Shown piece by piece: positions 57,341 to 58,795 of a DNA stretch of 64,000 nt (the stretch's first letter is position 1; the number at the start of each line of letters is the position of its first letter). The stretch is from Octopus bimaculoides. Taxonomy: Eukaryota. The stretch spans positions 49,475,976 to 49,539,975 of the forward strand of contig NC_068989.1 in NCBI RefSeq assembly GCF_001194135.2, in the 5' to 3' direction. Below the pieces are notes generated by a model that saw only the letters and a program-made list of their open reading frames with translations, was not told the origin of the DNA and searched no databases. The translations under genes were made by a program, and so were the position numbers.

Positions 57341-57874
57341 TAACGAAATAGAGGCAATTGTACGAACTGCTAATTTAACGGTAAATGCCACAATAGTTAT
57401 TATAGATAAATTTCTTAAGATATATATATTAGGCACATGCATTAAATGTTAATTTAAGGGTTAATATGTAGCTGTAAATACCTTGCAACTTTGCAACTGC
57501 TGCGATAATTATCAACTGGTAGTTGAACTGTGAATGTGTATTTTTATATATCTTGGACTTTGTGTTATCACATAAGAATTAAAAGTGAAAGAATAAAAGT
57601 GAAACAATATTTTAGATAGTCGTGTCTCACGTGGTGAAACCGTCTAATACCGACTCCGTTCAGAAAGCTGGAATAGAAGATGTTATTCGAAGAAAGAACA
57701 CTGTACAATGAATATCCACAGAACCAAGCTGTAGCTTTTAAATGCTTTTACTCCAGGTCACAAATATTTACAAGTTGAATAAATCACGAAAGGTACGGTT
57801 TTATATTTAAGAGATGAGGAATTCTGTACATTATTTACATTCCACAGATATTTTTCCTCATCTTGTTTGTTGTT

Positions 57875-57920
57875 AACACAATGTTTCGGCTGATATACCC
57901 TCCAGCCTTCTTCAGGTGTC
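57875..57920 (-). ncRNA. Minimal type I hammerhead ribozyme motif, catalytic core intact
   Basis: GACAC-CUGAAGA-A-GGCUG-GAGGGUAUAU-CAGCC-GAAA-C-AUU-GUGUU. Stem I 5 bp with one G.U, stem II 5 bp; G16.2>A is a CpG-type change. Confidence 0.75.
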
Positions 57921-57995
57921 TTGGGGAAATTTCGAACCTGAGTTCTCATTCCTAAGGTATTTTGCGATGTTGTTGTTGTTATTATTATTATTATT

Positions 57996-58031
<36 letters not shown>

Positions 58032-58047
58032 AGTGTTCGGGTTACTG

Positions 58048-58118
58048 GACCGCGGGCATATGGCATAGGGGTTAAGAGCGCGGGCTACTAACCCCAAGAT
58101 TCCGAGTTCGATTCCAAG
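58048..58118 (+). promoter_or_regulatory. tRNA-derived Pol III head (tRNA-Ile(AAU)/Asn-like, not a functional tRNA)
   Basis: A box TGGCATAGGGG 58061-58071, anticodon-like loop CT-ACT-AA, B box GAGTTCGATTCC 58104-58115. Colinear with the eukaryotic tRNA-Ile(AAU) pattern TGGTTAGAGCGTGGTGCTAATAACGCCAAGGTCGCGGGTTCGATCCCC recalled from memory; stems broken. Confidence 0.75.
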
Positions 58119-58217
58119 CAGTAACCTAAACACTAATAATAATAATAATAATAATAATAACAACAACAACATCGAAAATACCATAGGCATGAGAACCCAG
58201 GTTCGAAATTTCCCCAA

Positions 58218-58270
58218 GACACCCGAAGAAGGCTGGAGGGTATATCATATATCAGCCGAAACGTTGTGTT
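58218..58270 (+). ncRNA. Minimal type I hammerhead ribozyme motif, U4>C lesion
   Basis: GACAC-CCGAAGA-A-GGCTG-GAGGGTATATCATATAT-CAGCC-GAAAC-GTT-GTGTT; palindromic AACGTT stem III; predicted cut after 58265. Confidence 0.7.
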
Positions 58271-58795
58271 AATAACAAACAAGATGAGGACAAATATCCG
58301 TCGAATGTAAATAATAAAATCATGAAAGGTATATACAAATGAAAGGCCATGTTCAGCTTCTGTATATCCTACGACATAGCTGCTCAATATCTATTAGCTG
58401 TTGCGTGCTTATGCAAGAGCTAAGGAGGTCATGTCCTCGCACGCTGCTGTCACGATGACGAAGAAGAAGGACTCAGTGCCGGAACCCCAGAGTTACATCC
58501 TGTGCCACCTATTGGCGAGCTATTTAGACAGCTACCGTCAGGGAAGGTAACTATGGCGACAATACTATAGCCTTATCACATTAGAATTAAAAGTGAAAGA
58601 ATTAAAGTGAAATAATATTCACTTTTGACACGTAATACTGAACCAGTCTAGAAGATTGCTCCGGGGAAAATGTTTTGGTCCATGATACTCCATGGATCCT
58701 AAGTAATGCATGTGTAAAATTTCAAAGAAATCGGTTGGGTACTTCTCGAGTTTTAATGATTCACACATACAGATAGATACATATACATTCTCAGT

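What the first reader, a model, noticed from the sequence alone, without database searches (positions are those of the whole stretch)
57798..58315. tRNA-headed, double-hammerhead foldback retroelement whose hairpin loop is exactly the Pol III promoter
Seen: the layout is revcomp(body)-[71-nt tRNA-like loop with A and B boxes]-body. The inversion is exact up to the loop edges (TAGTGTTCGGGTTACTG / CAGTAACCTAAACACTA) and mirrors the trinucleotide tract. Each arm contains a hammerhead motif. Established: Penelope-like elements (PLEs) carry minimal type I hammerheads in their pseudo-LTRs (Cervera and de la Pena 2014) and often integrate with inverted pLTRs; tRNA heads drive SINE transcription. Inference: a Pol III-transcribed, SINE-like non-autonomous element borrowing PLE machinery. 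One mechanism is that cDNA snaps back via acceptor-stem-like GGTTACTG/CAGTAACC complementarity and copies itself, which would explain why the loop equals the tRNA part. I do not recall this combined architecture being described in cephalopods, but cannot check.
Basis: partly seen in the sequence, partly recalled or inferred. Interest (0 to 1): 0.9.

Follow-up and report, generated by a model that had tools for sequence, protein, structure and literature searches.

The report
Small hammerhead retroelement inserted as hairpin
This octopus-type DNA holds a 521-base hairpin-shaped insertion: two mirror-image copies of a small parasitic element with a degraded self-cutting RNA motif, with every structural mark of copying by Penelope-like retrotransposon enzymes and a tRNA-promoter-like piece at its centre.

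Summary
Window 57796-58316 is a 521-bp foldback flanked by a 15-bp target-site duplication. The arms are 93-95% complementary, the loop is 71 nt, and one minimal type-I hammerhead lies in each arm, on opposite strands.

Two more foldbacks of the family are in the window (36854-37318, 25605-25851). More copies were recovered from octopod read assemblies.

All copies show Penelope-like-element (PLE) insertion marks:
- an inverted, 5'-truncated partner copy;
- a 25-38 nt "tail", usually on one end only;
- target duplications of about 8-15 bp.

The loop has a significant A-box/B-box pair. It is not a tRNA by ARAGORN, Rfam or folding.

Arm-to-arm junctions differ between copies, so the hairpin forms anew at each integration. 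"Loop = promoter" holds for this copy only. In 4 of 6 head-bearing copies the longer arm begins 11-25 nt upstream of box A, which fits a Pol III start.

The tail sits on the arm not contiguous with the head. That argues against a single snap-back cDNA and for two cDNAs primed from both DNA strands and joined by microhomology.

No autonomous partner was found. Closest precedents are schistosome Sm-alpha elements, animal retrozymes and PLE pseudo-LTRs. I rate it a new variant of a known kind.

The parts
57781..57795 (.). Left target-site duplication of copy 1 (AAATCACGAAAGGTA)
   Evidence: Matches 58317-58331 at 14/15 positions and lies directly against both element ends.
57796..57829 (-). 34-nt 'tail': a 3' extension present only on the inverted (left) arm. 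Sense strand reads GTACAGAATTCCTCATCTCTTAAATATAAAACCG.
   Evidence: The right arm has no counterpart. The same tail is found on one arm of copies 2 and 3. It fits the PLE tail described in PMC8557442 and PMC11167929.
57830..58047 (-). Left arm: an inverted, 5'-truncated copy of the unit (body, microsatellite, CAGTAACC..).
   Evidence: Inverted repeats I1-I3; arm alignment.
57875..57920 (-). Minimal type-I hammerhead of the left arm: GACAC CUGAAGA A GGCUGG..CAGCC GAAA CA UU GUGUU. One defect (ACAU in place of the palindromic ACGU).
   Evidence: Descriptor hit. RNAfold recovers helices I and II with an open core.
57968..58031 (.). (GTT)4(ATT)6(GTT)14 microsatellite internal to the left arm.
   Evidence: Its mirror (AAT)9(AAC)4 lies at 58136-58171.
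58040..58047 (.). GGTTACTG, the junction microhomology. It is the complement of CAGTAACC at 58119-58126 and also resembles the leader T[T/A]A[C/T]TG seen upstream of the head in copy 2 and L003.
58048..58118 (+). 71-nt loop, the 'head'. A box 58061-58071 (TGGCATAGGGG) and B box 58105-58115 (AGTTCGATTCC), sense-contiguous with the right arm.
   Evidence: Only A+B pair in the window, 0.03 expected. Homologous heads in copy 2 and L003, and by eye a degraded one in L004. Not a tRNA by ARAGORN or Rfam.
58119..58316 (+). Right arm: the sense copy of the body, ending at AATGTAAATAATA without a tail.
58218..58270 (+). Minimal type-I hammerhead of the right arm, with core CCGAAGA (U4 changed to C) and a 7-nt insertion in loop 2. 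Predicted cut after 58265 (GUU|G).
   Evidence: Descriptor hit with one defect.
58317..58331 (.). Right target-site duplication of copy 1 (AAATCATGAAAGGTA).
36854..37318 (+). Copy 2 of the family. Tailed inverted arm on the left; 72 nt of extra sequence upstream of box A; head 37116-37165 with its B box truncated; untailed sense arm. TSD AAAAT[A/G]TCTCAGTT (36840-36853 / 37319-37332).
25605..25851 (-). Copy 3, an older subfamily about 20% diverged. Both arms stop at the TTCGAA palindrome, leaving a loop of 0-2 nt. No head and no microsatellite. The tail is on the right arm. TSD TAATC[C/T]TTTCTG (25593-25604 / 25852-25863).

Best explanation
The feature is one integration event of a short (about 0.3 kb) non-autonomous retroelement. 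Its sense unit is:
- a short leader;
- an A-box/B-box (Pol III type 2-like) head;
- an (AAT)n(AAC)n tract;
- a body with a PLE-type minimal hammerhead;
- a 3' stem-loop;
- a tail of about 30 nt.

It was most likely copied into the genome by a Penelope-like element's RT/GIY-YIG protein, which cuts and extends both DNA strands. On this model, one 3'-OH primed a cDNA at the internal initiation site (no tail), and that cDNA ran to the 5' end of the RNA, head included. The other 3'-OH primed at the downstream site (with tail) and ran inward. When its 3' end (GGTTACTG) could pair with the end of the first cDNA, the two were joined.

The product is revcomp(body+tail) - head - body, flanked by a 15-bp duplication.

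Shown here:
- the element's anatomy and the three in-window copies;
- the target duplications and the tail asymmetry;
- junctions that differ between copies;
- the hammerhead and A/B-box motif statistics;
- related copies elsewhere.

Inferred, not shown:
- PLE proteins as the machinery;
- two-cDNA joining;
- Pol III transcription from the head.

The hammerheads in this copy are each one mutation from the consensus, so the copy is probably inert.
For: PLE insertion marks:
- Seven of eight resolvable octopod-family copies are inverted dimers: three in the window plus L001/2, L003, L004/5 and L009. L010 is solo.
- The tail of 25-38 nt sits on one arm only in c1, c2, c3, L003, L004 and L009, and in family-b locus L008.
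- Target duplications are 15, 14, 12, 10 and 12 bp, plus weaker ones of about 8-10 bp.
- These are the published PLE hallmarks: an inverted 5'-truncated copy, a 30-40 bp tail often at one end only, and a variable-length duplication (PMC8557442).
- They have a biochemical basis. The PLE protein cleaves and extends both strands and starts reverse transcription at two adjacent internal sites, and the tail is the sequence between them (PMC11167929).

Hammerhead:
[quoted passage not shown] Chance expectation is 0.00-0.02 per window.
- The GAAA box, both strands of helix II, and TGTAAATAAT just before the internal start site are invariant across all six arms, although copy 3 is 20% diverged.
- RNAfold of the tailed arm returns the hammerhead helices plus a 3' stem-loop whose apex holds the short-arm end (z = -3.6).

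Junctions:
- They differ in every copy, and several lie at self-complementary sites: TTACTG/CAGTAA in c1, TTATTG/CAATAA in L003, TTCGAA in c3.

Head:
- The head is contiguous with the body in c1, c2, L003 and L009, and by eye in L004 (degraded; no profile hit). It is therefore part of the unit, not a nested insertion.
- The longer copy starts 13, 11, 25 and 14 nt upstream of box A in c1, L003, L004 and L008.

Related families and hosts:
- A profile of the translated arm finds 179 short ORFs. They include a second family with perfect tandem min-HHRs and the same layout of inverted copy, tail, duplication and head.
- Octopus genomes carry recently active Penelope families (PMC13282606).
Against: - No RT/GIY-YIG ORF lies in the window or in any fetched locus. 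None of the 150 listed profile hits is a long PLE ORF carrying this module (the one long hit, P0082, is an unrelated EGF-like repeat protein). The partner is therefore unidentified.
- Rfam hammerhead models give no hit. The control shows they also miss perfect min-HHRs.
- No arm in the window has a fully intact core.
- Helix covariation is not demonstrable. The U-A versus C-G difference in helix II can be explained by CpG decay, and a protein-level proxy test is not significant (p = 0.19).
- The head is not a tRNA by any model.
- Copy 2 carries 72 nt upstream of box A, and c2 and L004 share leader sequence. The RNA 5' end is therefore not sharply defined.
- L009 has the tail on the head-contiguous arm and L001 has tails on both arms, so the tail rule is only a tendency (5 of 6 head-bearing copies).
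- Only about ten copies were examined.
Confidence: 0.7

Rival explanations
1. These are ordinary, heavily 5'-truncated inverted insertions of a longer element, either an autonomous PLE or a larger non-autonomous one. On this reading the A/B-box segment is just internal pseudo-LTR or UTR sequence, perhaps an anciently captured SINE fragment. It is neither the 5' terminus nor the promoter of a SINE-like unit.
For: - PLE insertions are typically strongly 5'-truncated.
- Copy 2 extends 72 nt upstream of box A.
- c2 and L004 share leader sequence CA(C/A)TCCATAA(C/T)T upstream of the head.
- In L009 the sense copy is truncated inside the head.
- The head fails every tRNA test.
Against: - All twelve-odd arms examined are shorter than about 350 nt. 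None runs into coding sequence.
- In four of six head-bearing copies, from two diverged families, the longer copy starts 11-25 nt upstream of box A.
- The A+B pair is statistically unusual.
- None of the 150 listed hits of the profile search is a long PLE ORF with the module.
Confidence: 0.2
2. A single cDNA reaches the 5' end of the RNA, snaps back through GGTTACTG/CAGTAACC pairing, and copies itself, making the hairpin in one intramolecular step.
For: - An 8-nt perfect complementarity sits exactly at the loop edges of copy 1.
- Junctions in c3 and L003 also lie at self-complementary sequence.
- Self-primed hairpin synthesis is a well-known reverse-transcriptase activity (general knowledge, not tested here).
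Against: - In c1, c2, L003, L004 and L008 the arm contiguous with the head lacks the tail, while the supposed self-copy has it. A self-templated copy cannot contain sequence that its template lacks.
- Copy 3's junction was originally a zero-loop palindrome centred on the CG of TTCGAA, which is sterically impossible for an intramolecular fold-back.
- The PLE protein is known to extend both strands.
Confidence: 0.1
3. It is a LINE-mobilised tRNA-derived SINE whose inverted half arose by L1-style twin priming.
For: - Variable target duplications of 10-15 bp and 5' truncation are also LINE features.
- The window holds other abundant SINEs.
Against: - There is no poly(A) or simple-repeat 3' end.
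- Twin priming inverts a different, upstream segment rather than duplicating the same 3' region.
- The tail asymmetry, partial tandems (L008) and min-HHR are PLE traits.
Confidence: 0.05
4. It is a foldback or MITE-type DNA transposon, or two independent nested insertions, or an assembly artefact.
For: Long terminal inverted repeats and a hairpin-shaped element. The assembly is rich in gaps.
Against: - The termini are asymmetric (34-nt tail) and duplication length varies from about 8 to 15 bp.
- One duplication pair flanks the whole structure, with no internal one.
- The arms are 5-10% diverged from each other, so they are not an assembly duplication.
- The same architecture appears at independent loci and in independent read assemblies.
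Confidence: 0.02

Closest known systems
Penelope-like element (PLE) insertions and their pseudo-LTRs with minimal hammerheads (Cervera and de la Pena 2014; Craig et al. 2021; Frangieh et al. 2024)
   Same: - min-HHR with an extra nucleotide after A9, a G10.1-C11.1 pair, a palindromic ACGU in place of helix III, and a short helix I.
- An inverted 5'-truncated partner copy.
- A tail of about 30 nt, usually at one end.
- Variable target duplications at AT-rich sites.
- 'Dual min-HHRs 100-700 bp apart on opposite strands' were already reported in Schistosoma.
   Different: - No RT/GIY-YIG ORF, and the unit is only about 0.3 kb.
- A Pol III-type A/B-box module and an internal microsatellite lie upstream of the hammerhead.
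- Seven of the eight resolvable octopod-family copies seen are inverted dimers.
Schistosome Sm-alpha / Sj-alpha SINE-like retroposons (Ferbeyre 1998; Laha 2000; as summarised in PMC2770079 and PMC6765202)
   Same: A tRNA-related, apparently Pol III-transcribed head followed by a hammerhead ribozyme in a dispersed, high-copy repeat of about 0.3 kb.
   Different: - Sm-alpha carries a canonical type-I hammerhead that Rfam detects, and its head is recognised as tRNA-Gln by tRNAscan. Here the hammerhead is the minimal PLE type and the head fails all tRNA models.
- PLE-style tails and inverted dimers were not described for Sm-alpha in the texts I could read.
Metazoan non-LTR retrozymes (Cervera and de la Pena 2020; Li, Clavereau and Pollet 2026 preprint)
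   Same: - Small non-coding HHR-bearing repeats thought to be mobilised by PLEs.
- The related family in L008 forms head-to-tail 129-nt tandem units with intact HHRs.
   Different: - Retrozymes are defined by tandem direct repeats of 170-400 nt with canonical type-I HHRs giving circular RNAs.
- The window copies are single sense units paired with an inverted copy, so a transcript has one sense HHR and cannot excise a monomer.
- No head was described for retrozymes in the texts read.
Classical tRNA-derived SINEs (LINE-dependent)
   Same: Size, internal A/B boxes with a 33-nt spacer, variable target duplications and high copy number.
   Different: - The 3' end is a PLE-type module, not a LINE tail or poly(A).
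- There is no cloverleaf.
- Copies insert as inverted or tandem composites.

Membership tests
PLE-mediated insertion (structural hallmarks) | Minimal type-I hammerhead of the PLE kind in the repeat | tested here: met
   The descriptor gives 2 hits at one defect or fewer and 3 at two or fewer, all of them arms of the family. Simulations give 0.00 and 0.02. The family consensus is defect-free.
PLE-mediated insertion (structural hallmarks) | Inverted, 5'-truncated copy adjacent to the main copy | tested here: met
   3 of 3 copies in the window and 4 of 5 resolvable octopod loci; also L008.
PLE-mediated insertion (structural hallmarks) | 30-40 bp tail, often at only one end | tested here: met
   34 nt in c1, about 27-31 in c2, about 33-37 in c3, 38 in L008. 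One-sided in most copies; on both arms in L001.
PLE-mediated insertion (structural hallmarks) | Variable-length target-site duplication | tested here: met
   15, 14, 12, 10 and 12 bp with at most one mismatch.
PLE-mediated insertion (structural hallmarks) | Autonomous partner (RT + GIY-YIG) sharing the 3' module | not testable with these tools
   None in the window or the loci. No octopus genome could be searched. None of the 150 listed hits of the profile search is a long PLE ORF.
tRNA-derived SINE | Internal Pol III A and B boxes with proper spacing | tested here: met
   TGGCATAGGGG, 33 nt, AGTTCGATTCC; a unique pair in the window with 0.03 expected. The inferred ancestral A box TGGCATAGTGG is perfect.
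tRNA-derived SINE | Head recognisable as a tRNA (cloverleaf or covariance model) | tested here: not met
   ARAGORN finds none. There is no Rfam tRNA hit at E<=10 even on 111 nt. The fold is rod-like.
tRNA-derived SINE | Head at the 5' terminus of full-length copies | tested here: inconclusive
   The copy starts 11-25 nt upstream of box A in 4 of 6 copies, 72 nt upstream in c2, and inside the head in L009.
tRNA-derived SINE | 3' end shared with a LINE, or poly(A)/simple-repeat tail | tested here: not met
   Copies end at AAATAAT or at the unique tail ..TAAATATAAAACCG. There is no poly(A).
tRNA-derived SINE | Pol III transcription | not testable with these tools
   The sense strand lacks T4 runs, but 63% of shuffles do too.
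Non-LTR retrozyme | Head-to-tail tandem repeats, each with a type-I hammerhead, giving circular RNA | tested here: not met
   The window copies are inverted, not tandem. The related family in L008 does form 129-nt tandems. Circular RNA cannot be tested here.
Hammerhead ribozyme, type I (Rfam RF00163 and relatives) | Match to the curated covariance model | tested here: not met
   No hit at E<=10. The control with perfect min-HHRs in L008 is also missed, so the test is uninformative for this subtype.
MITE / foldback DNA transposon | Symmetric terminal inverted repeats reaching both ends, and a fixed-length target duplication | tested here: not met
   A 34-nt one-sided tail, and duplications of about 8 to 15 bp.

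The most novel reading that the evidence does not exclude
Octopods, and at least one other unnamed eukaryote lineage, may harbour a class of SINEs that use a Pol III A/B-box head but parasitise Penelope-like elements rather than LINEs. If so, each compact insertion records three things: both reverse-transcription start sites (tailed versus untailed arm), extension from both DNA strands, and microhomology-guided joining of two cDNAs. Thousands of genomic copies would then be a natural read-out of the still poorly understood PLE integration mechanism.
Probability: 0.35. Interest if true: 0.65.

Novelty: new variant of a known kind. Interest (0 to 1): 0.5.

Why it matters
PLE integration is the least understood retrotransposition pathway. 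Inverted or tandem pseudo-LTRs and the 'tail' were explained biochemically only in 2024, from one lizard element studied in vitro. A 0.3-kb non-coding passenger that reproduces all these marks at every insertion would give large in vivo samples of start-site choice, junction microhomology and truncation.

It would also extend the SINE concept to a PLE partner in cephalopods, whose genomes are unusually SINE-rich. It links schistosome Sm-alpha, animal retrozymes and PLE pseudo-LTRs.

When transcribed inside genes, such foldbacks form near-perfect RNA duplexes of about 215 bp. These are candidate ADAR or Dicer substrates in animals known for heavy RNA editing; this last point is speculation. One copy is already annotated as the N-terminus of an Octopus bimaculoides protein isoform.

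Tried and rejected
Searches that gave nothing or were uninformative:
- ARAGORN and Rfam, at gathering and E<=10 thresholds, on the window, on the loop alone and on copy 2, gave no tRNA and no hammerhead. For min-HHRs the Rfam negative is uninformative, because Rfam also misses perfect ones.
- Relaxed ARAGORN calls (Pro or Ile with an intron) were discarded as threshold artefacts.
- Two exact-pattern scans of metagenome contigs, one for the arm and one for the head, gave 0 hits.
- A search for sequence strings in papers returned only primer coincidences.
- The first word-indexed protein search gave one Octopus hit with no retrievable contig.
- The P0017 locus was too long to fetch.
- The Pol III terminator (T4) test was uninformative.
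- Helix-II covariation was tested through a W/R versus Q/R codon proxy. It was not significant and is confounded by CpG decay.
- The RT gene near the L008 copy is LINE-type, not PLE.

Explanations rejected:
- Nested SINE insertion in the loop. The same head-body junction is seen in c1, c2, L003 and L009, and by eye in L004.
- MITE, twin priming and assembly artefact; see the rival explanations.
- The miRNA and snoRNA 'hits' at 58750-58890 are a TA/TG microsatellite.
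Full report
**1. The observation**

The sequence at 57.8-58.3 kb is a long inverted repeat. Arms 57830-57897/58248-58315 are 93% complementary and arms 57891-57963/58175-58247 are 95% complementary. The repeat continues through a trinucleotide tract up to GGTTACTG (58040-47) and CAGTAACC (58119-26), which leaves a 71-nt loop. 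As RNA the element folds into one hairpin of about 215 bp (-299 kcal/mol, z = -30).

Directly outside lie AAATCACGAAAGGTA (57781-95) and AAATCATGAAAGGTA (58317-31), a 15-bp target-site duplication. The element is therefore 57796-58316. The left arm has 34 nt at its outer end (57796-57829) that the right arm lacks. The window itself is gap-rich, microsatellite-rich non-coding eukaryotic DNA with no credible ORFs.

**2. The motifs**

ARAGORN finds no tRNA. Rfam finds neither tRNA nor hammerhead, even at E<=10 and even when only the 111-nt loop region is searched.

I wrote a descriptor from the features Cervera and de la Pena (2014) give for PLE minimal hammerheads:
- CUGANGA;
- an optional extra nucleotide;
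- helix II closed by G10.1-C11.1;
- GAAA;
- a palindromic 15.2-16.2 with no loop 3;
- U-H;
- a short helix I.

At one defect or fewer it hits exactly two places in the window, the two arms. On the - strand the left arm reads GACAC-CUGAAGA-A-GGCUGG..CAGCC-GAAA-CA-UU-GUGUU. The right arm has CCGAAGA and ACGU. At two defects or fewer it adds one arm of a second copy. Sixty Markov simulations give 0.00 and 0.02 hits. The majority consensus of the arms is defect-free.

RNAfold of the tailed arm returns helices I and II around an open core. It also returns a 3' stem-loop (AGAUGAGGAA/UUCCUCAUCU) whose apex contains the point where the short arm ends (z = -3.6).

As a control, two perfect min-HHRs found later in locus L008 are also invisible to Rfam. 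The Rfam negative therefore says nothing about this subtype.

The two hammerheads are on opposite strands. No single transcript carries both in sense.

The loop contains TGGCATAGGGG, then 33 nt, then AGTTCGATTCC. This is the only A-box/B-box pair in the window with one mismatch or fewer in each box; 0.03 are expected. It does not fold as a cloverleaf. 'Pol III promoter-like head' is justified. 'tRNA-like' holds only at the level of the boxes and a D-loop-like GTGGTTAAG.

**3. It is a family, and the hairpin is made anew each time**

Self-BLAST and nhmmer find two more copies in the window, and both are foldbacks.

- Copy 2 (36854-37318; TSD AAAAT[A/G]TCTCAGTT) has the same head. Its loop has 72 nt upstream of box A, and the B box is truncated by a deletion.
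- Copy 3 (25605-25851; TSD TAATC[C/T]TTTCTG) is about 20% diverged. It has no head and no microsatellite. Both arms stop at the natural palindrome TTCGAA, giving an essentially loop-less palindrome.

In each copy one arm ends near AAATAAT(GTA). The other continues for about 25-37 nt (GTACAGAATTCCTCATCTCTTAAATATAAAACCG). Within-copy arm distances (0.053-0.105) equal the distances between copies 1 and 2 (0.056-0.083), a star-like pattern of post-insertion decay.

**4. More copies from public data**

One reading frame runs open from upstream of the hammerhead to the tail, so I aligned its translations (A1) and searched 1.84 billion representative proteins. This gave 179 short ORFs at E<=0.001. 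They are translated min-HHR modules: PEEGWR.YQPKRC corresponds to CCUGAAGAAGGCUGG..CAGCCGAAACGUUGUG.

One group is octopod. It includes UniRef A0A0L8FV75 of Octopus bimaculoides and XP_052825882.1, annotated as a dystrobrevin-beta isoform, whose N-terminus is element-derived. The contigs fetched gave the following:

| Locus | Structure |
|---|---|
| L001/2 | Foldback, no head, both arms tailed |
| L003 | 45-nt tailed inverted arm, then head, then untailed sense arm |
| L004/5 | 75-nt tailed inverted arm, then leader, then a degraded head (identified by eye; no profile hit), then untailed arm; TSD ATAAATAGTA |
| L009 | Foldback whose sense copy is truncated inside the head; the tail is on the sense arm |
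| L010 | Solo tailed copy |
| L006/7 | Contig starts inside the microsatellite; unresolved |

The head-body junction is the same in c1, c2, L003 and L009, and by eye in L004. The head is therefore part of the unit, not a nested insertion.

Comparison of c1, L003 and c2 indicates that the ancestral A box was a perfect TGGCATAGTGG. It also indicates that c2 has a 7-nt deletion rather than c1 a duplication.

A second, very large family sits on long ENA contigs from an unnamed organism. In locus L008 it shows:
- on one strand, an A/B-box-like head plus a full unit ending without a tail;
- on the other strand, 2.4 head-to-tail units of 129 nt with two perfect min-HHRs;
- a 38-nt tail;
- a 12-bp duplication, CTTAAAAA[C/T]TGT.

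By a crude regex count, at least 7 of 153 ORFs span tandem modules and at least 7 span antisense-then-sense modules.

**5. What it is**

These are the published hallmarks of PLE insertions:
- strong 5' truncation, partial tandems, and an inverted 5'-truncated copy at the 5' end;
- a 30-40 bp tail often at only one end;
- a variable-length duplication (Craig et al. 2021).

Frangieh et al. 2024 showed that a purified PLE protein cuts and extends both DNA strands. They also showed that it starts reverse transcription at two adjacent internal sites, and that the tail is the sequence between those sites.

The window element reads as a direct in vivo record of that mechanism. One arm starts at the inner site and the other at the outer site, on opposite strands.

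Octopus genomes contain recently active Penelope families and hundreds of unclassified SINE families (PMC13282606). I found no RT/GIY-YIG gene in the window or the loci. The RT near L008 is LINE-type. The partner is therefore inferred, not shown.

**6. How the hairpin forms**

The head is sense-contiguous with the untailed arm in c1, c2, L003, L004 and L008. L009 is the exception. A self-templated snap-back copy cannot contain a tail that its template lacks, and copy 3's zero-loop palindrome cannot arise intramolecularly.

The better model has two minus-strand cDNAs growing towards each other from the two DNA ends. One reaches the RNA 5' end. The other stops where its 3' end can pair with the first, and synthesis switches template there.

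Junctions fit this model:
- c1: GGTTACTG, the complement of CAGTAACC, which also resembles the leader T[T/A]A[C/T]TG upstream of the head in c2 and L003;
- L003: TTATTG/CAATAA;
- c3: TTCGAA.

These steps are inference.

**7. Is the head a promoter at the 5' end?**

The longer copy begins at the following positions relative to box A:

| Copy | Start of the longer copy |
|---|---|
| c1 | 13 nt upstream (21 if the ambiguous octamer is counted) |
| L003 | 11 nt upstream (17 if the ambiguous hexamer is counted) |
| L004 | 25 nt upstream |
| L008 | 14 nt upstream |
| c2 | 72 nt upstream |
| L009 | inside the head |

Four of six fall where a type-2 Pol III gene would start (general knowledge of tRNA genes, not tested here). 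However, c2 and L004 share leader sequence, and c2 runs further upstream. A longer parent element remains a live rival (0.2). The T4-terminator test was uninformative.

**8. Comparison and novelty**

Every component is known:
- PLE min-HHRs, including 'dual motifs on opposite strands 100-700 bp apart';
- PLE inverted copies and tails;
- a tRNA-derived, Pol III-transcribed, hammerhead-bearing SINE-like element in schistosomes.

I did not find the combination described in the searchable literature. That combination is an A/B-box head, a minimal PLE hammerhead and a PLE tail, habitually inserted as inverted dimers, in cephalopods. Dfam, Repbase and SINEBase could not be consulted.

I rate it a new variant of a known kind. 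It is of moderate interest, mainly as a compact natural reporter of PLE integration.

Noticed in passing
window 12767-12990, 14455-14620, 55080-55320 (-): Three copies of a different, clearly tRNA-related SINE family, with boxes TGGCTGTGTGG .. GGTTCAGTCCC and body ..GGCACCTTGGGCAAGTGTCTTCTACTATAGCC... Its head has no similarity to the head of the foldback element. The same SINE abuts the element in L009.
   Followed up: partly
window 57565-57611 and 58573-58619: A 47-nt direct repeat (94% identical, TTATCACAT[A/T]AGAATTAAAAGTGAAAGAAT[A/T]AAAGTGAAA..) brackets copy 1 at -185 and +257 nt. There is no further similarity between the flanks and no other good copy in the window. Its origin is unexplained.
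   Followed up: partly
window 57797-57961 (-) and homologous arms; protein P0017: One reading frame stays open from upstream of the hammerhead through the tail (..MRTQVRNFPKTPEEGWRVYQPK.CVNNKQDEDKYPSNVNNV.NSSSLKY..). A copy supplies the N-terminus of RefSeq XP_052825882.1, 'dystrobrevin beta isoform X1' of Octopus bimaculoides. This is either exonisation or an annotation artefact.
   Followed up: partly
L008 9706-10395 (ENA ERZ21867824 ctg121048l): A related family in an unnamed eukaryote assembly has 129-nt head-to-tail units with two perfect minimal hammerheads, an inverted full unit with an A/B-box-like head, a 38-nt tail and a 12-bp duplication. More than 100 ORF representatives of this family are in the protein library.
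   Followed up: partly
L008 10128-10298; Rfam in general: Rfam release 15 hammerhead models do not detect even defect-free PLE-type minimal hammerheads at E<=10. Scans that rely on Rfam will miss this whole class.
   Followed up: yes
window 57968-58031 versus 58136-58171: The internal microsatellite differs between the two arms of one insertion: (GTT)4(ATT)6(GTT)14 versus the complement of (GTT)4(ATT)9. This reflects either RT slippage at integration or later expansion.
   Followed up: no
window 58750-58890: Sub-threshold Rfam 'miRNA/snoRNA' matches (mir-3149, 41 bits against a gathering score of 100) are a TA/TG microsatellite palindrome, not genes.
   Followed up: yes
whole window: 4116 N bases lie in many gaps, mostly next to (TA)n/(TG)n tracts. 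This is typical of a short-read draft assembly. Repeat copies may be under-represented or cut at microsatellites, as in contigs L006 and L007.
   Followed up: no
unit-wide: 58105-58115, 58199-58210, copy 3 junction 25700-25722, L001 815-870: GTTCGA/TTCGAA-type palindromic motifs recur in the B box, upstream of the hammerhead, and in family b. They repeatedly coincide with arm-to-arm junctions. They may favour cDNA-cDNA pairing.
   Followed up: partly
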